Virus record (IMG/VR): IMGVR_UViG_3300017991_005548
Coordinates: 124,001 to 188,000 of that record
Length of the DNA stretch: 64,000 bases
Reading direction: 5' to 3' (one strand)
This document shows, piece after piece, positions 3,027 through 19,131 of this stretch. The notes beneath the pieces are model-generated. The model was not told the origin of the DNA. It saw only the letters and a list, made by a program, of their open reading frames with translations, and did not search any database. Numbering within the stretch: the first letter of the stretch is position 1; every line of letters begins with the position of its first letter. The translations under genes were made by a program, and so were the position numbers.

Positions 3027-3674
3027 GCAAAAATACGAAAATTCAACAAAACCCATTTCCTCAGGTACATTTTCATATCTAACAACAAACCCATTTTCGA
3101 GCAATTCATAGACATAAAGTCTTGGAAAATCGAATGGGCCTGGATACTCGTTTGAAGTTGTGCTACTGTCACTACTTAAAGATTGGCTTGAACTACTGGA
3201 TGAGTCTTTTGAGCTAGAACTGGACGTACTGTCTGAACTAGGAGTATCTTCGCTACTGGTGCTGGAAGAATCTAATGAGCTTGAACTAGAGGAATACTCT
3301 TGTGAGCTTGAACTAGGAGATCCTAAGCTACTTGAAGAAGATTCGCTTGCCTCTGTTGAGCTACTACTGCTTGATGAGTCTTTTGAGCTTGAAGAACTGG
3401 ATTCAGTAGAAAGTGAAATTGAAGTAAGACTGGATTCAGAAGTTGGGCTTGATGAGCTTGATGAAGATATTCCCCCTATTGATAAACTTGATTCACTAGA
3501 AGAACTATATTCAATAGCTGGATTATAAATAGGTATAGAGGCCCATGTGATAATGGCACTCGTTATAGGATAACCAGTTATGATAGTAATATATCCATCT
3601 CCTGAACCAGCGTAAGCCTTCTTTCCTGTCAGGGGATAGTTATCAGATCTTCTTAAATCGTATCGTCTTATCAT
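3021..3674 (-). CDS. Small putative virion protein: beta-rich domain interrupted by a ~120-aa Ser-rich tract
   Basis: ATGA overlap with the upstream giant gene. Beta-strand-like N- and C-terminal parts (YITIITGYPITSAIITW / LYVYELLENGFVVRY..FSYFC) flank a poly-Ser tract. Confidence 0.75.
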   Translation of the reverse strand: MIRRYDLRRSDNYPLTGKKAYAGSGDGYITIITGYPITSAIITWASIPIYNPAIEYSSSSESSLSIGGISSSSSSSPTSESSLTSISLSTESSSSSSKDSSSSSSSTEASESSSSSLGSPSSSSQEYSSSSSSLDSSSTSSEDTPSSDSTSSSSSKDSSSSSSQSLSSDSSTTSNEYPGPFDFPRLYVYELLENGFVVRYENVPEEMGFVEFSYFCL

Positions 3675-6600
3675 TCTGGTAGCCTTTTGCTTATTGGAAC
3701 GTTTATAATAGTTCCATCACTTGACCTCGGAATCCTTTTGGAAATATTATACATTACTCCAATATGATGGATAACTGCGACCTCATCAGTGAAATTTGTT
3801 ACTCTTGTTGCGACTCTGAATGATGACGCAAAGAACAAATCCATAAATATAGTTGTCGATGGGTCCTGTGGAGCCAAGAATGTAATCGTCCCTTCAATAT
3901 TATTGGCCGCGTATTCTGAAGAATCAATCAAAGTCCCTTGAGTCTCATCCAGTCCAAGTCTATAAACATTCAGTGTAAAGTTTGCATTCCATCGACCATT
4001 AACAGCCGTATAAGTTTTGAAATCTTCTGTTTGTAATAATTCATTAAACCTTGTGGGCAATATCGTATGTTGATCTGGAATGATGTTATAGTACTCTTCT
4101 GGTCTCAAGGATTCACTTTGAGTCATAAGGTATTCTACAGTAGAGTTCTCTGGGACATCTGCTTCGCTAGTTATATGAATTGAAGAAATGTATTCGTCAT
4201 CGTCCAAGTTCACTGAGATTGGTTTGAAGAAAATAACGAATTCTCTTGGGTTGTAATAATCAACTTCTACTCCACCGTTAATTACTGGGGTTTGGAAATC
4301 AGAGTTTCCAACGAGTTTGATCTCATATTGAATATATTTCTGCAAAGCATCAATTGACTTGTCATGTTCATAAGGAATTGAATAGTCAATGAAGTCAGTC
4401 CAGTCAGAATATGTAATCCCATCTACACTAGTTCTTATTCTGTAGGTTACTTCTGCTCCTGTAGGAACGGTAACTCCCGCTATTACAGTAGTGTCTGGGA
4501 TATTGGGATTCTCAAAGACAATCGTCCCAGTAAGAGTTGTTGTGTTAATTTGTAAATTATTCCCTGATGCGATCTCATTACAAATACTATTTATTTGGGC
4601 TGAAGTGCTGTTATCTAAGTAGAATACAGACGATCCTCCCTCCTCTCCATATTTCTCAAGCAAGATAGAGTCAGATGCATGGGGTTGCCCTAATTGAATC
4701 GGAATTATCTGAACTTCACCCTCTCCATCAACAAAGTTGACAGTTTGTACAGCTTGATTTAAAGAATTCTCGGATGTATTCTCGTCGCCATCTGTGACAA
4801 TGATTACAAATTTCTTATAGTCTTTGTAATCTTCGTTATTTGTTTGATATTGGACCAATTGCTCTGCGGCTCTTTTTACTGCATCATGCAATTGACTTGC
4901 ACCAAAGAAACCAAATGAATCGATTGCAGAGGCCAAGTAGATATCATCACTTGTTAACTCTGGGACTCTATGTCTAATGGATGGATACCATTGTTGAATA
5001 CTGGCCACATTGATGATGAATTGTCTTTCGGAAAGATAACCATCAGACGTTGCAGAAACTCTGGCCTTAATATGCATGTAATCTCTTTTTACTCCTGCTC
5101 CCATTACCAAGAATCCAGGATCAGTTCCTTCTTCGTCTTCTGGTGGTTTGTATGGAAGTAGTTCAACAGTAATACGAGATCCATCAGTTACAATCTCTTC
5201 TGGTACGACAATTACATTCCCGATATCGTCAACGTACTGATACTCAGGGAACTTCGCATAAACACGAATATCAAAACCTCTTTCAGTTTCTTCGATATCG
5301 GTAGCAGTATAGAATGTTGCGGACGTATCTTCACTTCCAGCAGGGCCAGCAACTCCTGATTGAGATGAAGCTTCTTCTTCGTCCTCATAATCTAATATAA
5401 AGATTGGTTCACCATTATTAAGGTCGTTCCCCAATTCTATCTTAGTAGCAAGTCGTCTTGCCAATTCAGTTCCAGCAGGCACTTCGAGCGTAGCAAACAT
5501 CATTCTGTTGCCTTCTGGATTCACAGGTTCATTTTCATATGGTTGCGAATTTGTGGGATCGTATCTAACTGTTCCATTTACAACAAAGTCTGTATCAATA
5601 TTCTTTGTTGGAAGAATGTTCGTCATGGCAACACATCTGACATTATGAGAGTGACTTAACTGCTCATCTGATTCATAGCTGGTAAACGTATGAGTATGAT
5701 TGCCAATTGAGCCGAACAAATTAATCGTACTTGTCGTAGTGCCATTCCCATTGATATCTAAGCTAATTACATGAGTGTGACTGCTTACTACTTCACCTCC
5801 GCTATCTTCGTCATATACGTCTGAACGAATTAAACCAGACTGAACAGAATAGTCAGACAAAGAAATGTCTTGGTTGGGACCGACAATCAAACAACCATCA
5901 ATCAGGTTTCTTGTATCCTTCATCTGAGGTAACTGTCCACCAGAAGCATTACTCTCTTCGCAAATTCCACTTTCAAATGTCACTTTTGGCAATGGATACT
6001 CTATTACTGACTCAAAATCGGTTCCCTCATTAATTGTGAGTTGATTGAGAATTGGTTGGCCTTTCCAAGTCAATTCAGCATAGATTCTTGCAGTAGTAAC
6101 TCCATCTCTGACAAAATTAGTCTCATATTTTAGCTCAATACCAAGGGGTTCCACATATTGTTGTAGTGGTTTTGGAATTCTAATGCCACCACCAGGAGTG
6201 GGGAGTGGCCTTCCATTGGCGATTTCTCCTCTTCTGTATCCCCCTTCTTCCTTTCTGTAAGAGGTATATGCTTCAACCTGACTTAACCAAGGCTCTCTAA
6301 AGATCTCACGTTCTCCAAGAGGTTGCTGATGTCCAATATTTTTGTTTTTAGGAATGGCTGTTAACTCAAGCCTATCTGTTTGCCAAGTGGACCTTCTAGG
6401 GTTTGAATTGAATGTTGTTAAAGTTCTTGGTAAATCATTCGGTTGTCCCAAACCTCTAAGCCTTTTTACACCATCCTCTCCAACGAAAATGTCAGTTGGG
6501 TTGAAGTCATCTTGTAAATCCACTACAATTTTTGCGTTTGGATTACTTTCTCCATCAGCGTAGATAGGTGTCAGAGCGTCTTTTGCATAAAAAATGAATG

Positions 6601-9600
6601 AATCATCCTCATCTCCAAAGTTCTGACCAGTCAAGCTAACGATCCTTCTAACTTTTCTTACATATCCAGATGGATGGAAAACTTCAATATCTACATTAAC
6701 ATCCACAATTGGAGGGCAAAGTTCTGCCGCCGCCGCACCCGCTTCCCTTGGTTCAACTGGCTCTATTGGCCCAATGAATACCCCTCCAGCCCAACCATTA
6801 TCAGTAACACTTGAGCTTGGCTCAACATTAAATTGTTTGGCTGATCTAAAAGAGAAGTTTACTTGGACGTTATCTTCAACAACTTCACTAGCGTCAAGAT
6901 ATTCCACGCCAGTCCCTATCTCATAAACTTCATTTTCAGCAGGGACCAAAACGCCTGGATTTACAGAAGTTATAGTAACTGGATTCGCTATGAAGAACAT
7001 ATCTGCTAATATTTGCTCATGTTGATCTCTGTCCCCAAACGATACAGAAGCTTCGATAAATAACAAGGAAACAATATCACTCGTTGGTATTGTTATAGAG
7101 GCTTTGCCATTAACTATTTCTAAAGAGAATTGATACTGCTCAAACTGTTTGGCATATGTCCATTCTGCTGGATCTTGATAGAAAAGTCCGCTTTCTTCCT
7201 CAGTATCTTGTTGAACAGATCCACCAACAAGTTCAATGTATTGATTAATGATGTCATTTGCGTTAGTAGATCTGAGTCCAGTTCCAGAACTTGCACTTGG
7301 TGCGCTATCCGTCTCATTAACAGATTCAAGAACTTCTTCGAACGGATTGTTTTGAACTATTTCTCTCCATTGATCGATAGCTGTTTTGGGTGTTTCCACA
7401 GGCTCCCCATTTTCATCAACAGCCACATTTTCCAATGGTCTTATATTAGCAAATTGTTGAGTTGTTGGATATGAAGAATCTTTATAAACAACATTTGATG
7501 CTGTTGCATCCAAATCAATCACTCTATTTGTATACAGAGTTATATTAATGAATTGATCGTTAGCTAAAACAAACTCATCAGCCACAATATAATTAAGAGT
7601 AATTGTACTGCCATCAGAAGCATGATATCCTCTAACATACCTTTTCTCATATCGTGGAAAACAATCTAAGCTATCTTCATCTTTTGGAGCGGCTAGATAA
7701 TATTGGACCCGATCTGATTCAACATAAGTACTGTCAATAACAATAGGGGAAATAAAAGAAACTTCAAATGGATCTAGATACAATCTAGCAAGAGTCCTCC
7801 CAGTTTCACCCATAAAATCGGCATATGCGAAAATCTCATAATCTTTCGAGAAGAATAAAGGATTTTCTATGCCAGGGATATTCAGCCCTTCAAAAGTTTT
7901 CTCCTCATATTCAGTGGCAAAACTCTGCATAGATGACGTAGCCAAACCATTAGAGGTATATATTGGAGTTTCGATTACATAATCGACATCTTCTTCTGTG
8001 GCATCAGTTTCTTCAGCAGTTGGTAATTCTGTGGCCGTTTCTTGATCCCCATCATTTTGCTCTAATTGAGCTACAATATCCGTTTCAGGAGAGTATCTGA
8101 GTAATCGACTTAAATCTTCTTCTTTGTCTTTTACTGTTTCCAATATATCTTCAACAATAGGAAGTACCCTTGCACAAACGTTACCATCAACAGTTGGCAT
8201 ATCAAGAGTTTGCCTCTGAGTAAATTTTTCTGCAAGATTCAAATCTTCATAAGGAGTTGATGGTGGAACTCTGTCGATATCATATGGTTTTAATAATGAT
8301 GGATCAACATCTTTGTCATTAACAATTGGAGTCACATCAACGCTAAGTATCTCTGTCGCAAGAATATTATCTGTTGGAGTTAACTTCTCATCTGACGATT
8401 CGTTAAGTCTTATGGTTGTTCCCAATTCAGCAGAAACATCAAACAAAAGTGGATCGACAATATCAATGTATGGCCCAAGATTTGGATCAGTTCCAATCTC
8501 ATCAATTTTGGTTGTTTGGATGTTACCTGATTTATCTAGAATATCAATAATACTTTCTCTGAAATACCCCTCAGTAGATTGTACATAAATTCTTTTTTGG
8601 CCAGCAAACGATGGGTATGTTACAAAGGCTGATTCTATTTTGTCTTTTGCAAAAATGTCTGGCTCTTTATCAACTAACAAATTGACTTCTGTTCCGTCAG
8701 GGAACGGAGTTCCATCTTTCTCAAAGAAACTCATTGGAAGAAGGGCTGTCTGCCCAAAGAAGAAGATGTTATAACTCACCCATTCACTAAATGCTTCGAA
8801 ATCCCACTCTAAATAGTAACCATCTGAATTCTGCAAATAAAAGACGACATCTCTTGAGACCTTAGTATCTCTAACAAGGATGTTTGCGGTTGATCCGTTA
8901 ATGTTTGTTATTTTGTTATAAGAACTGTCTTGAACAATACTGCCAGCTAAACTATTATTTGTGACAGCGAGGCGCACACCAGGATCGAAGGTTATTGTAT
9001 TACTATCAATCTCTGTGATTGTATGGCCAATATTAGCGGCATCCCCTTGTAAGATATCTATTACATCTCCAACTTCAAAATCAGAAGCGTCTTCAACTGT
9101 TACAGTTGTGTCTCCAACATACAAAATGCTAGTAATATTGCTTTGCGTTATTCCTGCATTTGTTAGTAGCTTTCTGGAGATAAGATTTGTAGATGCAACG
9201 ATATCTATGGACTCTTCATTATTTGGGGCATTATTCCCAAGAGTAATTGAAGGAGATTCACTGCCAGGATAAAATAACTGCCAATTAGTAAGATTTACAT
9301 CACTAATAACATTGAAGTCAACTTTGAAATCTCCAATATTGTATGTATGGTTATTTTCAAGAGTCTTAAATCCATAAGCAATCATGGGATCTTCAACAGA
9401 AACAGCAGTAACTGATGAGAAATCTATTGTCGCATCACCAGTTCCAGAAACCAGATTCAAAGTCCCACTATCAATTGGACTAGTGTTACCATATGTAATT
9501 AAAGAAATCTGATCACTTTTTAGCTTATGTTGAACCGTAAACTCAGCACCATTATTCTCATAAACAGCGTCAACATCAGCCTGAGAACCCGAAACATCAA

Positions 9601-11587
9601 AGATGTAAGTTGTTCTACTTGGGTTATTCAGGTCTAGGTTAATCGTTGCGAATGTCCCAAGTCCTGCTGTAATAGTGGATACATCAACATCAGAACCCCC
9701 GAAGGTGAACATATCAAACTTTATGTCAGACGGATAGTAGGTTTTAAATCTATTTACTAAGCACTCAACGATGTTTTGTCGGTTGTTGTATCTGTCCATC
9801 ATCCCCATACTTCCAGAACTATCTACAACAAATGAGAGTATTGCATCAGAGTACTCAATTTCACCATCAACAATGTCATCTTCAATGGTTATCGGGTCTG
9901 TGGCAGGAGGTGTTGTTATAGTACTGTTTCCTGGATCGAAAGGGTCAAAGTTACCAACAACTCTTAAAGCAAAAACGGAATTGTAAAGGTCTTCCCAAGT
10001 AGTCTCATCTTTACTTGTCCATGCAAAAGTGTCTGAATCAGCATTTTTCTCATCATATGCCCATAATACAAAATTATCTTCATCTCCATTGTGGCGCAAT
10101 GTGATGGAAAGATATCCATTACTAGGAGTTGTTTCATCCATTAAATCGAAATCGAACGCATACCAATCGTCTTTAACAATTGTTGAGGCATGAAGTGAGG
10201 CCAAATGGAGTTCGCTTTTAGGAGTCCCATCATCATAACAGTCAGATATGGACATCCTTATCCAATAATTTGATGTTCCTCTTGCCCTGTACAAGAATAC
10301 ATAAACCTTACCAATACTGTATTCCGAATCATAGACTTTGAATGTTTGTGCAAGTCTATTTCTTATGTTTGGGTTGGCCGCAGAAGACAAACCTAATAGC
10401 AATGGTTTTGTTTGGTTCCAAAAGAGACCCGAACTAGAAGAGCTTGAGGAAACATTTGCTTCACTTTCACTACTGGTACTGGAAGAATCAATACTTGAAC
10501 TACTAGAGGTTGAATTACTTGTTGGACTGGATGAAGAAGAGTTTGACTGTGAACTTTCCGATTGAGAACTATGCCCAAGGCTTGAAGAAGATGAGCTTGA
10601 ATCAAGAGAACTTGAACTAGAAGAGCTACTTGTTGTAACTGTGCTGGATGAGTAACCACCCGAATCAGAAGAGCTTGAATCAAGAGAACTTGAACTACTG
10701 CTAGAACTTGAGCTAAATTGGTTACAAGATAGGGCTAAGGTATTCGGAAATGGCAATAGGGTTCCATCCCAGTCAACTGTACCAGATAATCCACTATTGT
10801 TTTGTTCAATAAGAGTTATTGTTCCTGCGCCAGTCCTTTGACCGACAGCTATTAAGTTGATTAAGCCAACCTCCCTATAAACTCTGACCTGTTGAATTGC
10901 TCCTTGGACAAACAAACCAACATACATATTGCAATTGGTAGTGTTTCCATCTCCCATCCCTGAAAAAGTCCAGTTTGTGAAGTAAGCACAATTGCCCCCT
11001 TCGCAGAATGGACTTGTACAACATTGGGAGCTACTTGAGCTTGGAGATTGAGTCGATTGACTGCTTGTACTTGAAGAATCAATAGAGCTAGACGAACTAG
11101 AGGTGCTTCTGTCGATACAATATATTATGCCTGAATAAGAGAAGTCAAGTGGAGTCCCATCCCAATTTACTTGTCCAGTTATCCCGCTATTATCTCTTTC
11201 TTCAAGATCTATATCTGAGGCTACCAATGAAGTAACTTGCCCCAAAGCTATGATATTAAAATATGTTGGGTCTTGGTATAGTTCAACCTGCTGAGTGTTA
11301 GTTGCTGGGAAGAACACCGTTCTTACATAAATAATTTCATAATCAAGACTTACCCCAATAAGATTCCACCCAGTTAGATGAGCACAAGCAGTTCCTTCGC
11401 ATTCTGGGTATTGACAGTATCCCGAACTACTAGAGCTTGAGGAAGAGTCTATACTCGAAGATGAGCTACTAGAAGTAGAAGAAGAATCTATACTCGAAGA
11501 TGAGCTACTAGAAGTAGAAGAAGAATCTATGCTCGAACTCGAACTTGAACTTTCGCTATATTGAAAACTTGAACTTGAACTTGACAT
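3671..11587 (-). CDS. Giant (2638 aa) tail appendage/adhesin-like structural protein with Ser-rich N-terminus, two Cys modules, a split vWA (MIDAS) domain and an HxH triad
   Basis: vWA motifs FVVDSSGSM (~aa 588) and GASQLHDAV...VIIVTDGDEN (~aa 2230-2270). Duplicated C..P.CEG..CA..T.W...QQV..Y...IA.GQ...NSG..G.V.WDG module. HTH/HTH/HSH triad. Lies within the tail-gene block. Confidence 0.8.
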   Translation of the reverse strand: MSSSSSSFQYSESSSSSSSIDSSSTSSSSSSSIDSSSTSSSSSSSIDSSSSSSSSGYCQYPECEGTACAHLTGWNLIGVSLDYEIIYVRTVFFPATNTQQVELYQDPTYFNIIALGQVTSLVASDIDLEERDNSGITGQVNWDGTPLDFSYSGIIYCIDRSTSSSSSSIDSSSTSSQSTQSPSSSSSQCCTSPFCEGGNCAYFTNWTFSGMGDGNTTNCNMYVGLFVQGAIQQVRVYREVGLINLIAVGQRTGAGTITLIEQNNSGLSGTVDWDGTLLPFPNTLALSCNQFSSSSSSSSSSLDSSSSDSGGYSSSTVTTSSSSSSSSLDSSSSSSSLGHSSQSESSQSNSSSSSPTSNSTSSSSSIDSSSTSSESEANVSSSSSSSGLFWNQTKPLLLGLSSAANPNIRNRLAQTFKVYDSEYSIGKVYVFLYRARGTSNYWIRMSISDCYDDGTPKSELHLASLHASTIVKDDWYAFDFDLMDETTPSNGYLSITLRHNGDEDNFVLWAYDEKNADSDTFAWTSKDETTWEDLYNSVFALRVVGNFDPFDPGNSTITTPPATDPITIEDDIVDGEIEYSDAILSFVVDSSGSMGMMDRYNNRQNIVECLVNRFKTYYPSDIKFDMFTFGGSDVDVSTITAGLGTFATINLDLNNPSRTTYIFDVSGSQADVDAVYENNGAEFTVQHKLKSDQISLITYGNTSPIDSGTLNLVSGTGDATIDFSSVTAVSVEDPMIAYGFKTLENNHTYNIGDFKVDFNVISDVNLTNWQLFYPGSESPSITLGNNAPNNEESIDIVASTNLISRKLLTNAGITQSNITSILYVGDTTVTVEDASDFEVGDVIDILQGDAANIGHTITEIDSNTITFDPGVRLAVTNNSLAGSIVQDSSYNKITNINGSTANILVRDTKVSRDVVFYLQNSDGYYLEWDFEAFSEWVSYNIFFFGQTALLPMSFFEKDGTPFPDGTEVNLLVDKEPDIFAKDKIESAFVTYPSFAGQKRIYVQSTEGYFRESIIDILDKSGNIQTTKIDEIGTDPNLGPYIDIVDPLLFDVSAELGTTIRLNESSDEKLTPTDNILATEILSVDVTPIVNDKDVDPSLLKPYDIDRVPPSTPYEDLNLAEKFTQRQTLDMPTVDGNVCARVLPIVEDILETVKDKEEDLSRLLRYSPETDIVAQLEQNDGDQETATELPTAEETDATEEDVDYVIETPIYTSNGLATSSMQSFATEYEEKTFEGLNIPGIENPLFFSKDYEIFAYADFMGETGRTLARLYLDPFEVSFISPIVIDSTYVESDRVQYYLAAPKDEDSLDCFPRYEKRYVRGYHASDGSTITLNYIVADEFVLANDQFINITLYTNRVIDLDATASNVVYKDSSYPTTQQFANIRPLENVAVDENGEPVETPKTAIDQWREIVQNNPFEEVLESVNETDSAPSASSGTGLRSTNANDIINQYIELVGGSVQQDTEEESGLFYQDPAEWTYAKQFEQYQFSLEIVNGKASITIPTSDIVSLLFIEASVSFGDRDQHEQILADMFFIANPVTITSVNPGVLVPAENEVYEIGTGVEYLDASEVVEDNVQVNFSFRSAKQFNVEPSSSVTDNGWAGGVFIGPIEPVEPREAGAAAAELCPPIVDVNVDIEVFHPSGYVRKVRRIVSLTGQNFGDEDDSFIFYAKDALTPIYADGESNPNAKIVVDLQDDFNPTDIFVGEDGVKRLRGLGQPNDLPRTLTTFNSNPRRSTWQTDRLELTAIPKNKNIGHQQPLGEREIFREPWLSQVEAYTSYRKEEGGYRRGEIANGRPLPTPGGGIRIPKPLQQYVEPLGIELKYETNFVRDGVTTARIYAELTWKGQPILNQLTINEGTDFESVIEYPLPKVTFESGICEESNASGGQLPQMKDTRNLIDGCLIVGPNQDISLSDYSVQSGLIRSDVYDEDSGGEVVSSHTHVISLDINGNGTTTSTINLFGSIGNHTHTFTSYESDEQLSHSHNVRCVAMTNILPTKNIDTDFVVNGTVRYDPTNSQPYENEPVNPEGNRMMFATLEVPAGTELARRLATKIELGNDLNNGEPIFILDYEDEEEASSQSGVAGPAGSEDTSATFYTATDIEETERGFDIRVYAKFPEYQYVDDIGNVIVVPEEIVTDGSRITVELLPYKPPEDEEGTDPGFLVMGAGVKRDYMHIKARVSATSDGYLSERQFIINVASIQQWYPSIRHRVPELTSDDIYLASAIDSFGFFGASQLHDAVKRAAEQLVQYQTNNEDYKDYKKFVIIVTDGDENTSENSLNQAVQTVNFVDGEGEVQIIPIQLGQPHASDSILLEKYGEEGGSSVFYLDNSTSAQINSICNEIASGNNLQINTTTLTGTIVFENPNIPDTTVIAGVTVPTGAEVTYRIRTSVDGITYSDWTDFIDYSIPYEHDKSIDALQKYIQYEIKLVGNSDFQTPVINGGVEVDYYNPREFVIFFKPISVNLDDDEYISSIHITSEADVPENSTVEYLMTQSESLRPEEYYNIIPDQHTILPTRFNELLQTEDFKTYTAVNGRWNANFTLNVYRLGLDETQGTLIDSSEYAANNIEGTITFLAPQDPSTTIFMDLFFASSFRVATRVTNFTDEVAVIHHIGVMYNISKRIPRSSDGTIINVPISKRLPE
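11448..11525. repeat. Perfect 39-bp tandem duplication (codes SSTSSSSSSSIDS-type unit)
   Basis: tctatactcgaagatgagctactagaagtagaagaagaa occurs at 11448-11486 and 11487-11525. Confidence 0.9.
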
Positions 11588-11589
11588 CT

Positions 11590-14500
11590 TTAATTAACTT
11601 CTGGCTGAATCAGAGGTAAAATCTCTGAACTTCCTTTCTTTGTAGAGAAGATTTCTCCACCTGTTGTACCTGCTACTGTTTGTCCTGACGCAGATTCAAC
11701 TCTTACTATACCATTGACTTCTAAGTTGCCTTCAACGAAGTCATTTAGGTCAGCTATATTCTCCCAGGTATTCCCATCATCCTCACTATTATAAATGAAA
11801 CTGCTTGAACCCACGACCAGAATATTATTTTGGTCTTTTTTCATATCGGAAACGACATCGATTAATGCAGTGTTTCTGTGAGTATGTTGAGAAGGCAACC
11901 CTCTAATCAGATAATCTTCCACCTGGATTGTTTCAACTTGATTGTTGCGTACCATGTGCTCATGTGTATTCGAAAATTCGTCTCTCAAAACCTTTACCTG
12001 AACAGTATTCGCAACAAAATAAGCGTTACTTGCAACGATCTCTAGTTTTATGGTTGTCGAGTCGATTACTGATTTGATAAAATTGGTTTCTGATTTATTC
12101 GCAGAAGATATGATAGTAATCTTATCTCCATTAACCATATTAGTTGTATCCTCAACCTTAATCGTTGAGTCTCCCAACTCAATATCTTCTGTGACAACAT
12201 GTGTACTTGTTACAAAGTCATCATAATATATATTCTTTGTATAGCCATAATTAGTGGCGTTGATTTCCCAACTCCAAGTCTCAGAAATTTTGATATTGTT
12301 GTATTCGGTGAAGTCCCAATTAGTATTGTTGAGTAACTTAACGGTCATTGTTGTCGCTGTATGCTGAACTACCTCACTAAAATATTCAACTCCAATTTCC
12401 AATGGGTTCCAGAATCGAATTCTTGCATCTTTGAAAAGAGTTCCATCTTTTTGAACCAATGCATTGTTAAACAAGCTTGTATCAGAGACTTCAAACTTAA
12501 CAGTGGCATTTAGAACCTGTTCAAAAGAAGCTATCGATCCACTAACAAATCCACCAACCAAATCCAAATCATGATAATGGGATGAATCCGTAGAAGTAAT
12601 TTTGTTATTGAAAGAAGATAATGGTTGGTAAATCGGACCAGTTAATCTAAATACATCGTCAGACCCTATAATCAACCCCACAGGAGTTGTTATTATTTCA
12701 GTATTAATTAAGCTAGAGAAGTCATTTAGTATGATCTTATTCCTAGAATTCTGATAAACTGTCATGCCTTCTATCAACGCGGCATCACTATCACCATTGG
12801 TAACTTGGAAATCAAAATCAACCAAGAAATTATCAACAACATTTTGGGTAAAAACTACGTCAAGGTTAACTTTTCCACTACTGTCAATCCCTACGAATGA
12901 TTGCCCAGGTATGATATCTTCATTAGTAGAATCTGGAGTCTCAGCATTGTAGGGGGTGATAGTTCCGTCAATGATTATCTGATTTGACGTATTAGAAACA
13001 ACTGTGTACTCTTTGCCAAGATTTCCATTTTGATCAGTTGATACGTAAATTTTTCCGTTAGCCAATTGATTGTTTTGCGTGAGGAAGTCAAAATCAACAT
13101 CAAGAACTGACCTATCTCCAACAAATTTTATTCTCTTGCCAACATACGTTAACCAAATAGCTACGAATTCAGTTTCCAGTTCTACAGTTATTTCTCCACC
13201 AATTGTCCTAGAAGAGTTTTCCGCGATAGTGTACCCAGCTACAATAGGCAAGTCTACAACATAAAGTGTTCTTCCTTTGTATTGATTTGCTGAAATAGTA
13301 TCTGACGCTTCAATTGACAGAACTACCGCATTATTAACAGGGTTGACAGAAATCGATTTTATTAAGCCAGATACATCGATATTAGTTACCTGTCCTGGGA
13401 ATCCAACAGACCAAATCTGACCATCATAAGGGAACTCACCTGTTGTAGTTTGACTATCTTCGTAAACTCCGATATCTGTACCAAATAATATATTTCCATT
13501 GTCAGCTTCTACCATATCGTTTACAACAACTGGGTAAACTTCAAATGCCAAATTACCACTCTGGCTTTGGATAGTTTCATTAGCCTCTCTGCCAAGAACT
13601 ACAATAGATGAATCAAATCCTGAGTTGAAAATCACCCTACCACTGAAGATAGGAGTGTCGTTCCCTTCGGCAAAAATGGAGATGTTGCGTTTGTCCAATT
13701 CTCCGTCTGCATATCTAAAGTCATTTGGATATGTATAGGATACTGACATAATGGTATGTCCAAAGGTTGAAACTTTGGATGACTGAATTGTTCCCCTAAC
13801 TTCTTCAAACTTCCTATACGTACTCCATACCTTACCCAAGTCGGAACTTCTAAGAATATAGTGAATCACATTACTCAGGTCCGTTCCTGCGGCACTAGCG
13901 AGAATCCCACCAGTTGATATCGGCAAAAAGTTTACGATGTTTACGTTTTCAACTGTAGCATCAAACAATCCAGAGGTCCATACAAAATCACCAAGGTATG
14001 GGGTGTAAGCAATTTTATTCTTCCCTCCAACTAGCAAAGTATTGGTCAGGTCAACGTTACCAAGGTTTTCCTCTCCATCAAACTGTTGCCACCAAGACCC
14101 CATAGTTAATCTAACACTTGCGATTGTTTCTGGATCTTCTTCAAAAGGAGGAGAAACCTGGATAGAGTTTGGAGTAGCTTTTACAATAACATAACTTGTG
14201 TTATTTTTAGGGTTCGATGGATCACTTATAGTTTCTATCTTAACTGCTCTATTTGGTACTAACTCTGAGTAAATTCCCCCAGCCGCTTTGATAATACCAA
14301 CTGTTGGATCTCCCTCAATATTTTTAAATGAAGCTTCATGAGGTGGAATAACAACAAAACTATCTTCAGGCCATCTTAAGGACATAGAGAGTGCAGGGAA
14401 TCTGACGGCTTCCTGATCTTGAAGCGTCCATGTGATCATATCCTGAGTCAAATAAACCCCGTTATCAGTTGCAACTAACAGATTCTCATCCCCAAAGACA

Positions 14501-17500
14501 CTCATATCATAAACAGGTCTTTTCAACCCCCAAACATAGAACCAGTTCGCGTTTACATTGTCGTTTCTTCGCGCCCAGAAAACTCCGATATCAGTTCCAA
14601 CAATAATATTACCAGAGAATGTACCTGTTCCAATAAGGATCTTGTTGATTGACGTTGCTCCCTTAGCTTCAAATGGGCTTTGGAAGTTAACTAAACTGTA
14701 TGCTTCGCTATTCTCAATGTCTATGTAATTCCCATAATAGTTTTCATCCGCAGGATTTTCAGAATAATGGAAGTCATAGAAAAGGCTCTGAATCATCTCA
14801 GAATCGATTTCGGGGTAGACATACCTTACAGCTTGAGTCAACTGTAAAAGGTTGCTCAGATAGGCGTTATTTAGCTCATATGGCCTTTGATCGCTTTCAT
14901 ACGACAGCCGATCTTCTATTTCTTCATGAGTGTTGGTGCCAATGTTGGTTAAGAAACTATCATATATGTTCAATCGGATAGCCGAACTTGCATCTAAATT
15001 AGGCAATTTATAAACAGTGGCAGGAGTATCTATTTTTATTGTTGATCTCGGAGAGAATGAAATTATGTTATCTGAAACAGATGTGATTGTTCTATAAAGA
15101 TAAGATGTCTCAACTTCTCTCTCTTCAACCGATCTTTGAGCTTCAGCTTCTGCGGCTTGTTCCGCACTTGCGCCACTTTCTCCTCCAGCCACAACAGTTT
15201 CTGTTGGTGGAGGAAGCTCATCTTTCCGAATCGAAATGCGATCTCCAGCCTGAAACTGACTTGCGTCCTCAACTTCAATGAAATTATCATAAACAGATAA
15301 ACCGTTGGTCAAACTTGATGTTCCACTGAAGTCTACCAATCCTAATGTCGGATCAACTGTGAAACTCCATCCTCTAGATGCTCTATTATCGATATCTGTT
15401 TTGGTTGAGTAAATAAGTTTACTGTTAATATAGATATCATATGGCACATCTGTTGGCCATCCTCCACTCTCGGCATACCACTTATCGAAATTAACGAGAG
15501 TTGTAATAGTTTGATCAGTTACAGTAATCTCTTTTAAATAGAATGTTTTGCTTCTATTCCCATAAGCGTAATCGAAATATACATTTTCTCCGTTAAGAGT
15601 TAGTGATGGCAGTGGAGATCCAGAAAAACTAAACTTACTTGTAAACGATGAAGAATATTCATAGACTTCATTAACTGAGCCAACAAAGAATGATTCTAAA
15701 TCATATGACACTTGGAAAGAATATGCAACAATATCACTAATTTTATTCCACCCCCCAGAGTATCTATAAATGCCGTCTGGTTTAGAAAGATACATAATAC
15801 CATCATATGCAAAGAACTTGCCATTCTCACCTTCTTCTGGAAGATTGCAAATAAAATTCCATGTCTCTCCACTATCTTTTGATCTATAAACCTTTGTATT
15901 TGATACGGCATAGAGAGTTATGACTAAGCTATGGGTATGGCCATTGGCACTTTGAACAGTCCAATCGGTTACGTCATGAGTATGCCCATCTTCCAATTCA
16001 AGAGTTCCATTCCCATTAATGTTAACATCAAGAGTATGAGTGTGACCAAGCTTAGTTGTAACTTTCATAGACTTAAAATCTTGTTCAATCTGGTTGTAGT
16101 TACCTTCGAGTTTCTCAACCCAGGTCTTTCCTTGGTCTTCTGTTTTGAAAATTCCATCAGAGGCACAATATACGTTATTACTTGTGAAAACCAGTATGTC
16201 ATTAATGTTGGGAGATTCTCCTGGCCTTGTTGTATTAGAAAGTATTGTACTTCTATTGTGAGATCTGAGAACCAGAACTCCATTATTTGAAGCAACCCAA
16301 ACACTTCCTTCTTCATCTTGTTCTGCATTTTTGAACACCCCTACATTTGATGGAGTATTTGGGGCTTCCCAACTAAGATAGAAGTTATCTTGTAAGTTGA
16401 CATTTGTTGCAACGATATCTTTTCCCACAGTCAAGATTTTATCTGTTGTAACACCATTTCTTGTAATTTCTTGAACCTCGATTGATATCGCTGGGATACC
16501 ATCAAGATATCTCTCGACCTTGGCGACTGTTTTAACTGAGCCTGGATTCTCAGCAATCCTTTCTTGAACTTCTTCACTTTCTGGATCTAACAACTCATTT
16601 GTCTCTACGTCTCTAAGTTGAACCGCTATTAATGTCTCGTCATCTCCAACTTCATCAAAATCTTTAAGGTCAGTTATTTTGTAGTTTGGAACTGGAATAT
16701 ATGAAAGTTTTTGAATCATTGTTTGATCGGCATCACTATTTGATTCAGATTTCCCTACAATAAGATATGAATCTCCAGTTTCTGTAAGAGTTTCTTCCGC
16801 TAAAGCAATTTGCAGTGTGTAGATATCACTTGTAATCTTCAACGGAGTGCCAGTTTCTATCTCATAATTTTGCTTTGCTTTTTCGAACATTTCTAATAGA
16901 TCTGTTCCTGTCTCATAAAAAGGCAGATCGTTAATAACAAAAACAAACGCATCATCATTTGGGATCATGATTAAATCATCGGATGTTCCAACATATAGAT
17001 TACCGAATCGATCTTCAAACATAGAGTATGCAACTTTAACATCTCCAATAACTGATTGAATGATTTCATGAGTGTGAGAAGAATCCGTTTCAGTAGTTTC
17101 GTTTATGTCATTCTGCCAATCAAGCAATCCCTGACTCTCTGCATCCTCAACAACCCCATCTTGTACTGAGTGCAAATGGGCAACCAAATACGTTTCGTCA
17201 TCCTGCCCTACAGCATAGTATACAGGCTCGTCGTTGATGTATGTTTGTTCAGTAAGACCTGTATTCTCTTCATTTACCAATAAATTATGGTAATGGTCTA
17301 ATGTATTTTCTGTTACTGATGGTGTTACCAAGAAATTTATACCATCATTACTGATTACGGGATAGTTAAATGGTGAGAATGGTTCGTCTGTTCTTCCAAC
17401 ATGAGACAAGAATGGGATCTGAGAAATCTCAAATACTCCAGATGCGATTTTCTGAGCATTGACAAAAAAGATATTCTCATTCCTGATAACTCCTGTTACC

Positions 17501-19131
17501 TCTGAATTCCCAAGGATTTCAATCGTAACATGATCTGCCTCTAATCCTACCGTCTTTTGATAGTCGAGTAAAGTAACTTCAATATTTCTTGCCGCGTCAG
17601 GAGTGAAAACAAACGTGTCGTCTTTATCTCTTAACAATGCCTCGGCAGTTACACTTTGACTTTTCAAATCTGCAAATCCAGCAATGGACTGAGTTTCTTC
17701 ATCAAAGAATACAAATGGATTCGTGTTAATATCAACGCTTGCAAAAGAAGCATTGAATTCTGTTATCATGTTTAACATGAATCTATAAACACTACTTTGC
17801 TGTTCAGAATATTGGAATCTTGTTCCCTCATATTCAAAGTCAACACCATAAGTTTTGGTTATCCCTCCAATTATTCCTGTAAGAGAAATCGTCTTGGTTG
17901 TTGGGTCGGCAGTAATATCGTCAGATGTCTCGTCACCAACTGGGATGTTGTTTACATAAACTATGTATTGGCTTGATTCATCCCATACAAAATTTGAGAT
18001 ATCTGGGAGAACGTGAGTGTGGTCTTCAACAGTCCCAGTTGTAAACTCCTGAGTTTGCATTTCGTTCTCAACTATCTTATGATAGTGATTGTCAGCCGTT
18101 CCAACAATACCAACTGTTTGACCGTTACCATCAGTATCTATTGTAAATGTATGTCGATGTCCTTCGACAGTATCTGTTAGCTGACTTTCTGTTATGCTGA
18201 AATTTCCTCTTCTGCTTTCTGGGTTATAAGAGGTAAGAACTGCGTTTCTGAAATCTGTTTCAAGATTGATTCTTGCAGGATCGTATGATGCAGACCCACC
18301 ATGGTGATGGGCGGCAACAATTTGATTTGCATAACTGGTGATTGTAGATTCAAGATTCTTCAAAGTATTAACATCAGAAGTGTCAATAGAAACAACCTCA
18401 TTTCCTCTTGTTGTTACCAAACCTAAGAGTACTTTAGCTGGGGCCGCAGAAAAGTTTGGTGCTGAGTTAAAAGTAACTTCAGTAAAATGATTCGCAGAGT
18501 CATCTCTAAACTGATATGAGTATATCGCATCCATTTGAGTGTCGTAAGCTTCTTTTGCAACAATATAGTCATTAAAATCGTTGTAATCATTGACTGACGG
18601 TTCGGGGATCAAATATGGAGGGTAATCAGCCAAAGGCGGATAGAAATTAGAATATTTTCTAGTAACCCAAATATAAGTATCTGCATTGTTGTTTAAAGTT
18701 ATGACTTCTGGTATGACAACTTTTACGTAGGCATTTTCAATTGGTTTTGTTGGATTGAATGTTGGGTCATATTCTTGAACGACTGCGATATAGGCATCTG
18801 CTTCTGCATCAGTCATATCTTCTTCTGGGGCTTCTTGAAGTTTTACGACTTCAACTTCTCGATCTCCGCTAACCATACTTGATCTTTGTTTGACTGTATA
18901 TGGGCTTTCAGCGAAGTATCCATTAATAATTCCTCTACCTGGAAGTATTTGAACTGTTGTATCTGTTAGATGTTCTATTTCCCATCCTTCAATGACACCA
19001 ACACCAACGACTCCAACATATGACTCCATATTGTAGTCAACTGTGACGAATCTCTGGTATTCTGACTGAGCAGAATATGCTCCCCCTCTTGGGAAGTATT
19101 CTAATTTGAATCTTGGTGCAATTTTAGGCAT
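11590..19131 (-). CDS. Giant (2513 aa) tail fibre/appendage protein with Asp-box (BNR) beta-propellers and multiple HxH clusters; paralog of 39010-43377
   Basis: Asp-box-like motifs FKTEDQGKTW, YRSKDSGETW, YLTQDMITW, LRSSDLGKVW and YNSEDDGNTW. At least 12 HxH motifs. Its N-terminus aligns with that of the 1455-aa protein. Confidence 0.8.
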   Translation of the reverse strand: MPKIAPRFKLEYFPRGGAYSAQSEYQRFVTVDYNMESYVGVVGVGVIEGWEIEHLTDTTVQILPGRGIINGYFAESPYTVKQRSSMVSGDREVEVVKLQEAPEEDMTDAEADAYIAVVQEYDPTFNPTKPIENAYVKVVIPEVITLNNNADTYIWVTRKYSNFYPPLADYPPYLIPEPSVNDYNDFNDYIVAKEAYDTQMDAIYSYQFRDDSANHFTEVTFNSAPNFSAAPAKVLLGLVTTRGNEVVSIDTSDVNTLKNLESTITSYANQIVAAHHHGGSASYDPARINLETDFRNAVLTSYNPESRRGNFSITESQLTDTVEGHRHTFTIDTDGNGQTVGIVGTADNHYHKIVENEMQTQEFTTGTVEDHTHVLPDISNFVWDESSQYIVYVNNIPVGDETSDDITADPTTKTISLTGIIGGITKTYGVDFEYEGTRFQYSEQQSSVYRFMLNMITEFNASFASVDINTNPFVFFDEETQSIAGFADLKSQSVTAEALLRDKDDTFVFTPDAARNIEVTLLDYQKTVGLEADHVTIEILGNSEVTGVIRNENIFFVNAQKIASGVFEISQIPFLSHVGRTDEPFSPFNYPVISNDGINFLVTPSVTENTLDHYHNLLVNEENTGLTEQTYINDEPVYYAVGQDDETYLVAHLHSVQDGVVEDAESQGLLDWQNDINETTETDSSHTHEIIQSVIGDVKVAYSMFEDRFGNLYVGTSDDLIMIPNDDAFVFVINDLPFYETGTDLLEMFEKAKQNYEIETGTPLKITSDIYTLQIALAEETLTETGDSYLIVGKSESNSDADQTMIQKLSYIPVPNYKITDLKDFDEVGDDETLIAVQLRDVETNELLDPESEEVQERIAENPGSVKTVAKVERYLDGIPAISIEVQEITRNGVTTDKILTVGKDIVATNVNLQDNFYLSWEAPNTPSNVGVFKNAEQDEEGSVWVASNNGVLVLRSHNRSTILSNTTRPGESPNINDILVFTSNNVYCASDGIFKTEDQGKTWVEKLEGNYNQIEQDFKSMKVTTKLGHTHTLDVNINGNGTLELEDGHTHDVTDWTVQSANGHTHSLVITLYAVSNTKVYRSKDSGETWNFICNLPEEGENGKFFAYDGIMYLSKPDGIYRYSGGWNKISDIVAYSFQVSYDLESFFVGSVNEVYEYSSSFTSKFSFSGSPLPSLTLNGENVYFDYAYGNRSKTFYLKEITVTDQTITTLVNFDKWYAESGGWPTDVPYDIYINSKLIYSTKTDIDNRASRGWSFTVDPTLGLVDFSGTSSLTNGLSVYDNFIEVEDASQFQAGDRISIRKDELPPPTETVVAGGESGASAEQAAEAEAQRSVEEREVETSYLYRTITSVSDNIISFSPRSTIKIDTPATVYKLPNLDASSAIRLNIYDSFLTNIGTNTHEEIEDRLSYESDQRPYELNNAYLSNLLQLTQAVRYVYPEIDSEMIQSLFYDFHYSENPADENYYGNYIDIENSEAYSLVNFQSPFEAKGATSINKILIGTGTFSGNIIVGTDIGVFWARRNDNVNANWFYVWGLKRPVYDMSVFGDENLLVATDNGVYLTQDMITWTLQDQEAVRFPALSMSLRWPEDSFVVIPPHEASFKNIEGDPTVGIIKAAGGIYSELVPNRAVKIETISDPSNPKNNTSYVIVKATPNSIQVSPPFEEDPETIASVRLTMGSWWQQFDGEENLGNVDLTNTLLVGGKNKIAYTPYLGDFVWTSGLFDATVENVNIVNFLPISTGGILASAAGTDLSNVIHYILRSSDLGKVWSTYRKFEEVRGTIQSSKVSTFGHTIMSVSYTYPNDFRYADGELDKRNISIFAEGNDTPIFSGRVIFNSGFDSSIVVLGREANETIQSQSGNLAFEVYPVVVNDMVEADNGNILFGTDIGVYEDSQTTTGEFPYDGQIWSVGFPGQVTNIDVSGLIKSISVNPVNNAVVLSIEASDTISANQYKGRTLYVVDLPIVAGYTIAENSSRTIGGEITVELETEFVAIWLTYVGKRIKFVGDRSVLDVDFDFLTQNNQLANGKIYVSTDQNGNLGKEYTVVSNTSNQIIIDGTITPYNAETPDSTNEDIIPGQSFVGIDSSGKVNLDVVFTQNVVDNFLVDFDFQVTNGDSDAALIEGMTVYQNSRNKIILNDFSSLINTEIITTPVGLIIGSDDVFRLTGPIYQPLSSFNNKITSTDSSHYHDLDLVGGFVSGSIASFEQVLNATVKFEVSDTSLFNNALVQKDGTLFKDARIRFWNPLEIGVEYFSEVVQHTATTMTVKLLNNTNWDFTEYNNIKISETWSWEINATNYGYTKNIYYDDFVTSTHVVTEDIELGDSTIKVEDTTNMVNGDKITIISSANKSETNFIKSVIDSTTIKLEIVASNAYFVANTVQVKVLRDEFSNTHEHMVRNNQVETIQVEDYLIRGLPSQHTHRNTALIDVVSDMKKDQNNILVVGSSSFIYNSEDDGNTWENIADLNDFVEGNLEVNGIVRVESASGQTVAGTTGGEIFSTKKGSSEILPLIQPEVN

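What the first reader, a model, noticed from the sequence alone, without database searches (positions are those of the whole stretch)
5640..18165. Five single-chain 3xHxH modules: potential intramolecular hexa-His metal sites
Triads: HRH/HYH/HTH (~18010-18165), HYH/HLH/HTH (~17065-17300), HTH/HTH/HTH (~15930-16048), HYH..HEH/HTH (~11875-12580, itself split by an insert) and HTH/HTH/HSH in the neighbouring protein (~5645-5785). Three share HxH-x6-GNG. Established: in T4 gp37 and contractile-tail spikes, three chains each contribute one HxH to bind Fe octahedrally. Inference: here one chain may supply all six His, forming compact, insertable metal-binding modules, so the virion could carry many Fe or Zn ions.
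Basis: partly seen in the sequence, partly recalled or inferred. Interest (0 to 1): 0.62.

Follow-up and report, generated by a model that had tools for sequence, protein, structure and literature searches.

The report
Single-chain triple-HxH mini-domains in phage tail giants
Two giant tail proteins of a 296-kb marine or sediment phage carry five copies of a roughly 50-residue mini-domain whose six invariant histidines probably clasp one metal ion within a single chain, and this unannotated domain turns out to be widespread in phages.

Summary
P0001 (window 11590-19131, minus strand, 2513 aa) has 13 HxH motifs, against 0.6 expected. P0002 (3671-11587, 2638 aa) has 3, against 0.3 expected. Every HxH is invariant in 16 and 19 homologues at 27-72% identity.

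The triads are copies of one roughly 50-aa module, [G]-H-x-H-x-hydrophobic repeated three times, with hairpins between the repeats. A profile search found 952 cluster representatives. These include many stand-alone 53-100-aa phage proteins with exactly six His, and the C-terminal tails of XkdF-type prohead proteases.

AlphaFold2 folds a 53-aa stand-alone member as a monomer (pLDDT 94) with a threefold-repeated strand pattern. ESM Atlas holds the same fold in prohead proteases and in YmaF proteins (TM 0.83). One homologue lacks module 3 by clean excision from a beta-propeller.

Convergence of the six His and metal binding remain inferences: no coordinates were available and no metal was modelled. 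Modules 1, 3 and the P0002 module are canonical. Module 2 is expanded. Module 4 (split) is only weakly supported.

A 13th, lone invariant HxH was missed.

I rate this a new variant of a known kind, with moderately high interest.

The parts
11590..19131 (-). P0001, a 2513-aa giant protein with beta-propeller (BNR/Asp-box, Reg_prop) parts and four HxH triads plus one lone HxH
   Evidence: ORF and translation. Pfam Reg_prop hit. The AF2 model of aa 590-1185 matches beta-propellers. 16 homologues.
3671..11587 (-). P0002, a 2638-aa giant neighbour with a poly-Ser N-terminus, VWA-like parts and one HxH triad
   Evidence: The gene pair is syntenic in relative L007.
17989..18183 (-). Module 1 (P0001 aa 317-381), canonical: HRH-x7-GNG ... 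HYH ... HTH
   Evidence: A profile built from stand-alone proteins only gives i-E 1.4e-13. Invariant His.
17047..17319 (-). Module 2 (P0001 aa 605-695), an expanded variant: HYH ... HLH ... HTH with an extra hairpin and a helix inserted
   Evidence: Profile i-E 1.4e-3 for the first two thirds and 0.16 for the last. AF2 pLDDT 66-83, with hairpins after HxH 1 and 2. Invariant His.
15907..16068 (-). Module 3 (P0001 aa 1022-1075), canonical and the most compact: three HTH, spacing 20/15, inserted between propeller blades
   Evidence: Profile i-E 4.8e-13. AF2 pLDDT 82-90 in context. Cleanly absent from homologue P0019.
12547..12600 (-). Module 4, first third (P0001 aa 2178-2195): TS..HYH strand. 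Putative split module.
   Evidence: Weak profile piece (i-E 0.47) aligned to the correct profile positions 2-14. H2185/H2187 invariant.
11857..11985 (-). Module 4, second and third thirds (P0001 aa 2383-2425): HEH ... HTH, about 190 aa after the first third
   Evidence: Weak profile piece (i-E 0.68) at profile positions 31-45. H2390/2392/2416/2418 invariant. Not folded here.
5621..5803 (-). P0002 module (aa 1929-1989), canonical: HTH-x7-GNG ... HTH ... HSH
   Evidence: Profile i-E 1.9e-9. Triad kept in 19 homologues. Aligns with P0001 modules.
18301..18309 (-). Lone invariant HxH (HHH followed by GG, aa 275-279), not part of any triad
   Evidence: Resembles HYHGGG at aa 742 of T4 gp37. Role unknown.

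Best explanation
Each triad is an autonomous mini-domain of about 50 residues. It consists of three [G]-H-x-H-x-hydrophobic strands, the first two each followed by a beta-hairpin (the third runs on into the C-terminal strand), wound around a pseudo-threefold axis within ONE polypeptide. The six invariant His and three or four hydrophobic side chains form essentially the whole core.

The most likely arrangement is that the six imidazoles clasp a single octahedral transition-metal ion (Fe2+ or Zn2+). That would make it a single-chain counterpart of the site that three chains build in T4 gp37, P2 gpV and pyocin fibres. Its architecture would be analogous to the monomeric, locally threefold, metal-stapled PAAR/gp5.4 cone.

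In this roughly 296-kb phage from sediment and seawater metagenomes, the domain has been grafted five times into loops of two adjacent giant proteins at the distal end of the tail gene block. There it would act as a metal-stapled rigid knob or rivet. Insertions are tolerated only at the hairpin tips (modules 2 and 4).

Shown here: the motifs, their invariance, the family, its stand-alone existence, the confident monomeric fold prediction, and the insertion and excision behaviour.

Inferred: convergence of the six His, the presence and identity of the metal, the structural role, and that these proteins are in the virion.
For: (1) Enrichment and invariance of all HxH.

(2) A profile search of 1.84 billion representatives finds 952 proteins at E<=1e-3. 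Of 68 hits of 400 aa or fewer, 56 have exactly 3 HxH and 4 have 6. Many 53-80-aa proteins have exactly six His in total.

(3) Each of the three repeats shows H, x, H, x, hydrophobic (85/100/96%). His and the hydrophobic residue therefore lie on one strand face.

(4) AF2 of the 53-aa protein P0143 as a monomer gives pLDDT 94.1 and pTM 0.73. DSSP shows the same bridge-x-x-bridge(His)-x-x-strand pattern three times. ESMFold-based Atlas models contain the same fold at TM 0.90-0.95 and rmsd 0.7-1.2 A, so two predictors agree.

(5) Module 3 is predicted at pLDDT 82-90 inside a monomeric beta-propeller. Homologue P0019 lacks it by clean excision with conserved flanks, so its two ends must be adjacent.

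(6) It occurs in non-fibre contexts: C-terminal tails of XkdF-like prohead proteases of cultured Vibrio, Stenotrophomonas and Rhizobium phages, and YmaF proteins of Bacillota.

(7) Among the weak PDB matches, the ones with the best rmsd over most of the domain are PAAR cones: T4 gp5.4 at Z 3.4 and 2.2 A over 49 residues, c1882 at Z 3.0 and 2.4 A over 49. These are monomers of three hairpins with a small core and a metal staple (PMC12407873).

(8) The module profile does not match the trimeric Fe needle of T4 gp37 (score -19.4).
Against: No His-His distances could be measured, because the fold tool returns no coordinates. No metal was modelled and no experiment exists.

The PDB matches are all below significance (Z<4). 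Three HxH sites per chain also occur in genuinely trimeric fibre tips, for example Alteromonas phage V22 gp23 (PMC10579305). The local G-x-H-x-H-x-hydrophobic context is shared with T4 gp37. The count of three alone therefore does not prove an intramolecular site.

Module 4 is supported only by motif order and invariance. The oligomeric state of P0001 and P0002 is unknown, and tail-tip proteins are often trimers.
Confidence: 0.6

Rival explanations
1. Classical trimeric sites. P0001, P0002 and the small proteins are homotrimers, and each HxH joins its two symmetry mates on a threefold axis. Each 'triad' would then be three stacked metal sites, as in the T4 gp37 needle.
For: All structurally established HxH metal sites in phage fibres and spikes are of this kind (PMC12407873; PMC11705849). 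A modelled trimeric fibre tip with exactly three HxH sites is described (PMC10579305). The local motif context resembles gp37. Tail-tip proteins are commonly trimers (general knowledge).
Against: - The fold is confident as a monomer in two predictors.
- Hairpins return the chain to the same level after the first two HxH.
- The module sits in a loop of a monomeric propeller and is excised as a unit in P0019.
- It is found at the C-terminus of prohead proteases and in YmaF proteins, which are not fibres.
- HxH counts are 3 or 6 in nearly all small members, unlike the irregular 7-8 of gp37.
- The module profile does not match gp37.
Confidence: 0.15
2. Same single-chain fold, but a different use of the histidines. 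Possibilities are two facial 3-His sites (two metals), partly solvent-exposed His that bind a ligand or partner through a metal (for example a receptor or siderophore-type interaction), or a pH- or metal-sensing switch, rather than one buried octahedral ion.
For: The first His of each HxH and the second His of each HxH form two separate layers of three. The domain occurs in functionally diverse contexts: proteases, small proteins, spore-associated YmaF. Nothing here fixes the stoichiometry.
Against: In every solved HxH trimer site, both layers share one octahedral ion (PMC12407873). With only three or four other hydrophobic core residues, the His cluster must be interior (inference).
Confidence: 0.17
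3. The conserved His have no metal role. They would be, for example, a purely hydrogen-bonded structural motif or the residues of a small enzyme.
For: No direct evidence for metal was obtained here. HxH motifs also occur in metallohydrolase active sites (general knowledge).
Against: Six invariant His in a 53-aa protein with no other invariant polar residue leave no room for an enzyme. Paired i/i+2 His on beta-strands in threefold arrangement are a known metal ligand set in phage proteins.
Confidence: 0.05

Closest known systems
Trimeric HxH Fe/Zn sites of phage fibres and spikes (T4 gp37 tip, T4 gp12, P2 gpV apex, R-pyocin fibres)
   Same: Paired His at i/i+2 on a beta-strand, usually preceded by Gly or a small residue and followed by x-hydrophobic. 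Threefold arrangement, giving a six-His ligand set. Located in phage tail proteins.
   Different: In those sites three chains give one HxH each, and the sites are stacked irregularly along a fibre axis (gp37 spacings 32, 14, 37, 14, 9, 9). Here three HxH lie in one chain with return hairpins. The unit is autonomous and occurs as a 53-aa protein. The module profile does not match gp37.
PAAR-repeat spike tips (T4 gp5.4, E. coli c1882; PF05488)
   Same: A monomer with local threefold symmetry made of three beta-hairpins, a very small hydrophobic core and a metal staple needed for folding (PMC12407873). These give the best rmsd over most of the domain among the PDB matches (2.2-2.4 A over 49 of 53 residues).
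   Different: No PAAR motifs and no Pfam match. Z is only 2.8-3.4. The PAAR metal site is tetrahedral (3 His + Cys) at the hairpin tips, whereas here there are six His and no Cys. PAAR caps a trimeric spike, whereas here the module is inserted in loops or stands alone.
YmaF family (Pfam PF12788; Bacillota, spore-associated, function unknown)
   Same: Predicted fold matches: TM 0.83 and rmsd 1.4 A over all 53 residues. Protein-language-model neighbours score 0.86-0.88 with 156-181 shared features. Sub-threshold HMM hits reach 13-23 bits in stand-alone and XkdF-linked members.
   Different: The Pfam cut-off (27 bits) is never reached. The window's own modules and genome give no YmaF hit even at E<=10. 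No metal role is described for YmaF in the papers found.
C-terminal extension of XkdF-type / S78 prohead proteases of cultured phages (e.g. Vibrio phage vB_VpS_PG28, Stenotrophomonas phage Summit)
   Same: The same module (TS..GHxH..F.V.FD.NG...GHxHKI...HxH) lies directly after the Peptidase_S78_2 domain. Atlas fold matches are TM 0.90-0.95.
   Different: That context is head maturation, not tail. There is one copy per protein. It is unannotated there too.

Membership tests
Trimeric HxH metal site of phage fibres/spikes | Conserved HxH on a beta-strand | tested here: met
   15 triad HxH plus 1 lone HxH, invariant in homologues. Strand or bridge state in the AF2 models.
Trimeric HxH metal site of phage fibres/spikes | Each site is built from three identical chains on a true threefold axis | tested here: inconclusive
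   Monomer folds are confident, and the loop insertion and excision argue against this feature. The only direct trimer test gave no answer, and the oligomeric state of the giants is unknown.
Trimeric HxH metal site of phage fibres/spikes | Octahedral Fe or Zn bound by six His | not testable with these tools
   No coordinates are returned, no metal was modelled, and there is no experiment.
YmaF (PF12788) | Match to the Pfam HMM at or above the gathering score (27 bits) | tested here: not met
   No hit for the window's modules at E<=10 or in the whole genome. Relatives reach 13-23 bits.
YmaF (PF12788) | Same three-dimensional fold | tested here: met
   TM 0.83 and rmsd 1.4 A over 53 aa to an Atlas cluster in which 100% of members carry PF12788. 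Both sides are predictions.
YmaF (PF12788) | Profile-profile homology to YmaF sequences | not tested
PAAR repeat (PF05488) | PAAR sequence motifs / Pfam match | tested here: not met
   No Pfam PAAR hit in any scan.
PAAR repeat (PF05488) | Three-hairpin cone with local threefold symmetry | tested here: inconclusive
   Z 2.8-3.4, rmsd 2.2-2.4 A over 49 aa to 5iv5_ZA, 4jiw_D and 9vyi_A. This is below the level at which a shared fold can be claimed.
HxH-triad module family defined here (stand-alone phage proteins, XkdF tails) | Match to a profile built only from stand-alone proteins of 160 aa or fewer | tested here: met
   Module 1 i-E 1.4e-13, module 3 4.8e-13, P0002 module 1.9e-9. Module 2 is partial (1.4e-3). 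Module 4 is matched only in weak pieces (0.47, 0.68).

The most novel reading that the evidence does not exclude
The triads define a large, so far unannotated superfamily (YmaF-like) of natural single-chain 'His6 clasp' domains: a roughly 50-residue pseudo-threefold fold whose core is one octahedral metal ion held by three HxH strands. It would be the intramolecular counterpart of the trimeric phage Fe site. Phages use it as a portable metal-stapled knob in giant tail proteins, in prohead proteases and as free small proteins. It would be a new metal-binding fold class with no solved representative.
Probability: 0.5. Interest if true: 0.75.

Novelty: new variant of a known kind. Interest (0 to 1): 0.63.

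Why it matters
If the six His do hold one ion inside a single 50-residue chain, this would be a compact natural His6 metal domain. No solved structure matched by sequence, and structure searches gave only weak matches (Z<4). The family has 952 cluster representatives at E<=1e-3, is present in cultured phages, and is unannotated apart from a distant link to the uncharacterised YmaF family.

It would show that the phage 'HxH iron rivet' exists in a portable, oligomer-independent form. Such a form can be grafted into loops of monomeric domains.

It would also change how HxH counts in marine phage proteins are converted into metal-per-virion estimates (the 'Ferrojan Horse' line of work). Three HxH in one chain would mean one ion per chain here, whereas three HxH per chain in a trimeric fibre mean three ions per trimer.

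Finally, it would give a testable function to YmaF-like and XkdF C-terminal regions. The 53-aa stand-alone members are ideal for NMR, crystallography and ICP-MS.

Tried and rejected
- **Trimer test.** Complex prediction of stand-alone P0143 x3 with Fe x3 scored ipSAE 0.00 in both runs. The verdict was 'no answer', so it is neither support nor evidence against trimerisation.
- **PHROGs.** P0001 and P0002 gave no family.
- **Pfam on excised modules.** No YmaF hit; only chance-level hits.
- **YmaF HMM over the whole genome.** Nothing at E<=10.
- **NCBIfam.** Nothing relevant.
- **PDB by sequence.** The first small module profile (A1) matched only designed Kelch 'SAKe' proteins through a shared DGHTH motif in each repeat, which I judged a motif-level artefact. 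The larger profile (A6) matched only EF-hand loops through DxNGNG at E>0.4. XkdF protein P0187 and the P0001 N-terminal domain matched nothing.
- **Foldseek of the module.** Against PDB there was nothing at E<=0.001. pdb_via gave Z<=2.4. BFVD gave two plausible viral relatives only.
- **tblastn against the phage collection.** P0001 aa 300-1100, and the small proteins at E<=1e-3, found no match. Only at E<=10 did the XkdF hits appear.
- **Plasmid search.** It found one more XkdF-like protein and chance hits. The Priestia hit has no HxH.
- I left them out of every later submission.
- **Literature.** Searches for single-chain HxH triads, for YmaF structure or metal binding, and for XkdF plus histidine found no description of this module. 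The YHYH domain of jumbo-phage tail proteins (PMC7824862) is a different, larger domain and was not hit.
Full report
**What is there.** The window is bases 124001-188000 of a 296,327-bp IMG/VR virus record classed as 'provirus' and 98% complete. The finding covers two adjacent minus-strand ORFs:
- P0001, window 11590-19131, 2513 aa
- P0002, window 3671-11587, 2638 aa

P0001 has 13 HxH, holding 26 of its 39 His. Shuffles give a mean of 0.59, and none of 20,000 reaches 13. P0002 has 3 against 0.27 (45 of 20,000 shuffles). No other ORF of the window has a triad. A six-frame scan of the whole genome with a module profile and a triad pattern finds triads only in these two ORFs.

Two details need correcting. 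The spacer to GNG is seven residues, not six. A 13th, lone HxH (HHH followed by GG, aa 275-279) was overlooked.

**Conservation.** Word-based searches found 17 other P0001-like proteins (35-72% identity), 16 of which were aligned, and 19 relatives of P0002 (27-65% identity), all metagenomic. In the 17-row alignment, every HxH His is invariant or at least 90% conserved, while the middle residue varies. Each P0001 homologue has the same 13 HxH, with two exceptions: P0012 has one extra, and P0019 lacks module 3. The P0002 triad keeps spacing 27-28/15-17 in all 19 homologues.

**One module, not scattered motifs.** The compact triads align with each other. This covers P0001 modules 1 and 3 and the P0002 module. 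The shared consensus is T[ST]xxxGHxHxxx[IV]DxxGNGxT...HxHxI..W.V...GHxHxL.

Each third has the same local pattern of [G]-H-x-H-x-hydrophobic. The hydrophobic position is filled in 85%, 100% and 96% of 231 modules. The two His and the hydrophobic residue therefore lie on one face of a strand.

**Distribution.** I searched all 1.84 billion cluster representatives with a profile of 51 module rows. The search gave 952 proteins at E<=1e-3 and 76 at E<=1e-10.

Besides giant proteins of 2200-3300 aa, many hits are stand-alone proteins of 53-100 aa that consist of one module. Of 68 hits of 400 aa or fewer, 56 have exactly three HxH and 4 have six. The smallest members have exactly six His in total. 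Spacing modes are 24 and 15.

The stand-alone genes lie on phage contigs. One is near a terminase with an intein, and another is next to a KTSC-domain gene.

In cultured phages the module is the C-terminal tail of XkdF-like or S78 prohead proteases, directly after the Pfam protease domain. Examples are Vibrio phages PG28 and SIO-2, Stenotrophomonas phages Summit and DLP_5, and Rhizobium phages.

I also built a profile from stand-alone proteins only and ran it against the window's ORFs:

| Module | i-E | Assessment |
|---|---|---|
| Module 1 | 1.4e-13 | canonical |
| Module 3 | 4.8e-13 | canonical |
| P0002 module | 1.9e-9 | canonical |
| Module 2 | 1.4e-3, plus 0.16 for the last third | expanded variant |
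| Module 4 (two parts) | 0.47 and 0.68 | very weak, though at the correct profile positions |

**Fold.** AlphaFold2 of P0001 aa 590-1185 with 17 homologues gave pLDDT 83.8 and pTM 0.77. The scaffold matches beta-propellers, in line with the Reg_prop and BNR signals. Module 3 lies between blades at pLDDT 82-90, with a short hairpin after each of the first two HxH; the third HxH leads into the next propeller blade. Module 2 (pLDDT 66-83) shows the same plan with an extra hairpin and a helix.

AlphaFold2 of the 53-aa stand-alone protein P0143 with 70 module rows gave pLDDT 94.1 and pTM 0.73 as a monomer. The pattern 'bridge, x, x, bridge (first His), x, x, strand' occurs three times, at residues 9/12/15-18, 29/32/35-37 and 44/47/51.

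ESM Atlas holds the same fold in three settings:
- prohead-protease proteins, at TM 0.90-0.95 and rmsd 0.7-1.2 A over all 53 residues
- a YmaF (PF12788) cluster of Bacillota, at TM 0.83 and rmsd 1.4 A
- unnamed bacterial proteins

Language-model neighbours are again YmaF clusters.

No solved structure matches by sequence or by Foldseek. In an exhaustive structural alignment all Z scores are below 4. Among those weak hits, the ones with the best rmsd over most of the domain are PAAR cones: T4 gp5.4 at Z 3.4 and 2.2 A over 49 residues, c1882 at Z 3.0, and a phage P1 baseplate chain at Z 2.8. PAAR cones are described as monomers of three hairpins with local threefold symmetry, a core of 6-8 residues and a metal staple required for folding (PMC12407873).

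**Insertability.** Homologue P0019 lacks the whole of module 3, and the propeller sequence on both sides is conserved and contiguous. The module is therefore dispensable as a unit, and its ends must be adjacent. Length variation and large insertions fall in the hairpins, never next to the HxH. Examples are the insert in P0013 module 1, the extra elements of module 2, and about 190 aa in module 4.

**Interpretation.** The chemical idea of six His around one Fe or Zn is the most economical reading, for three reasons:
- There are six invariant His on three equivalent strand faces.
- Only three or four other core residues exist.
- There is the precedent of trimeric HxH sites and the PAAR analogy.

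It was not tested, however. The fold tool returns no coordinates and no metal was modelled.

The main rival is classical trimeric stacking. It is not excluded by the count of three, because a trimeric fibre tip with three HxH sites has been modelled in Alteromonas phage V22 (PMC10579305). T4 gp37 also shares the local G-x-H-x-H-x-hydrophobic context. Several results argue against this rival:
- The fold is confident as a monomer in two predictors.
- Hairpins return the chain to the same level after the first two HxH.
- The module is a loop insertion in a propeller.
- It occurs in non-fibre contexts.
- gp37 has irregular spacing and does not match the module profile.

A direct trimer prediction gave no answer and is not used as evidence.

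**Context.** All large ORFs of the window are on the minus strand. In transcription order:
1. a Phage_tube_2 tail tube protein (59434-60363)
2. a 2077-aa glycine-zipper protein that is probably the tape measure (50627-56860)
3. a series of large proteins with FG-GAP, BNR, Kre9/KNH Ig-like and Laminin_G_3 domains
4. P0001
5. P0002
6. a 217-aa protein
7. a metallophosphoesterase

The order Laminin_G_3, P0001-like, P0002-like, 218-aa protein, Metallophos is kept in a relative (L007). Placement at the distal end of a tail block suggests tail-tip or fibre proteins. This is an inference; no proteomics exist.

Near-identical DNA stands in two sediment metagenomes and one seawater metagenome. One of these may be the source sample.

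**Known families.** By Pfam's threshold the modules are not YmaF members, but the predicted fold agrees. I treat them as distant relatives. They are not PAAR proteins: they have no PAAR motifs, a different ligand set, and Z<4. They work like the trimeric HxH sites, with a six-His ligand set on a threefold arrangement, but they differ in the defining feature that three chains build the site.

The papers found do not describe this module or a metal role for YmaF.

**Verdict.** This is a real, strongly conserved feature. It is best explained as five grafted copies (three canonical, one expanded, one putatively split) of a widespread, unannotated single-chain triple-HxH mini-domain that probably holds one metal ion. 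I rate it a new variant of a known kind, with confidence 0.6 in the mechanism and interest 0.63.

Noticed in passing
window 18301-18309 (P0001 aa 275-279): A lone invariant HxH followed by GG (HHHGG; family consensus HxHGGxxxFDP) belongs to no triad. T4 gp37 has a similar HYHGGG at aa 742, outside its seven-site Fe needle. It could be a classical intermolecular site if P0001 is a trimer. Its role is unexplained.
   Followed up: partly
window 16012-16035, 18127-18150, 5747-5770 (hairpin 1 of modules 3, 1 and the P0002 module): The first hairpin loop, [DN]-x-[DN]-G-[ND]-G-x-T, reads like an EF-hand / DxDxDG calcium loop. The module profile's only PDB sequence hits are calmodulin-type loops, at non-significant E values. 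A second (Ca2+) site at the hairpin tip is possible.
   Followed up: partly
window ~10300-11587 (P0002 aa 1-430): The N-terminus of P0002 consists of long poly-serine runs (SSSSSSSIDSSSTSS repeats). They separate two Cys-containing segments of roughly 100-130 aa that look like repeats of each other (...C.YPECEG..CA... / ...CC.SPFCEG..CA...). This is unusual for a phage structural protein.
   Followed up: no
window ~9685-9830 (P0002 aa 586-634) and ~4600-4900: There are VWA-like segments with a DSSGSM (MIDAS-type) motif. The Pfam VWA_2 hit is only weak here, but relatives carry PF00092/PF13519. These would be further possible divalent-cation sites in the same protein.
   Followed up: no
window 28257-29348: A sulfotransferase-domain gene (PF00685/PF13469) sits in the middle of the block of large tail and adhesin-like genes.
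   Followed up: no
window 50627-56860 and 59434-60363: A 2077-aa glycine-zipper protein (likely tape measure) lies downstream of a Phage_tube_2 tail tube gene. By the usual rule of thumb of about 1.5 A of tail per tape-measure residue (general knowledge), this would imply a very long non-contractile tail of roughly 300 nm. No sheath search was made.
   Followed up: no
whole record (G000) /: The record is classed as a 296-kb 'provirus', yet P0001 and P0002 are also on record on a contig of 524,692 bp. It was not examined whether the rest is host DNA or more phage.
   Followed up: no
L005 2111-2740 (Vibrio phage vB_VpS_PG28 XkdF); L006 2108-2710 (Stenotrophomonas phage Summit serine protease): Prohead proteases of cultured phages end in one unannotated triple-HxH module after the Peptidase_S78_2 domain. 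They lie next to the major capsid gene, which makes this an experimentally accessible entry to the family.
   Followed up: partly
P0060, P0064, P0068, P0076 (metagenomic proteins of 179-355 aa): These proteins carry two modules in tandem (six HxH). Two of them (P0060, P0064) have long N-terminal regions rich in charged residues, scaffold-like in appearance.
   Followed up: no
window 855-2966: A metallophosphoesterase (PF00149; PHROG 'DNA transfer protein' also hits) is conserved two genes downstream of the P0001-P0002 pair in a relative.
   Followed up: no
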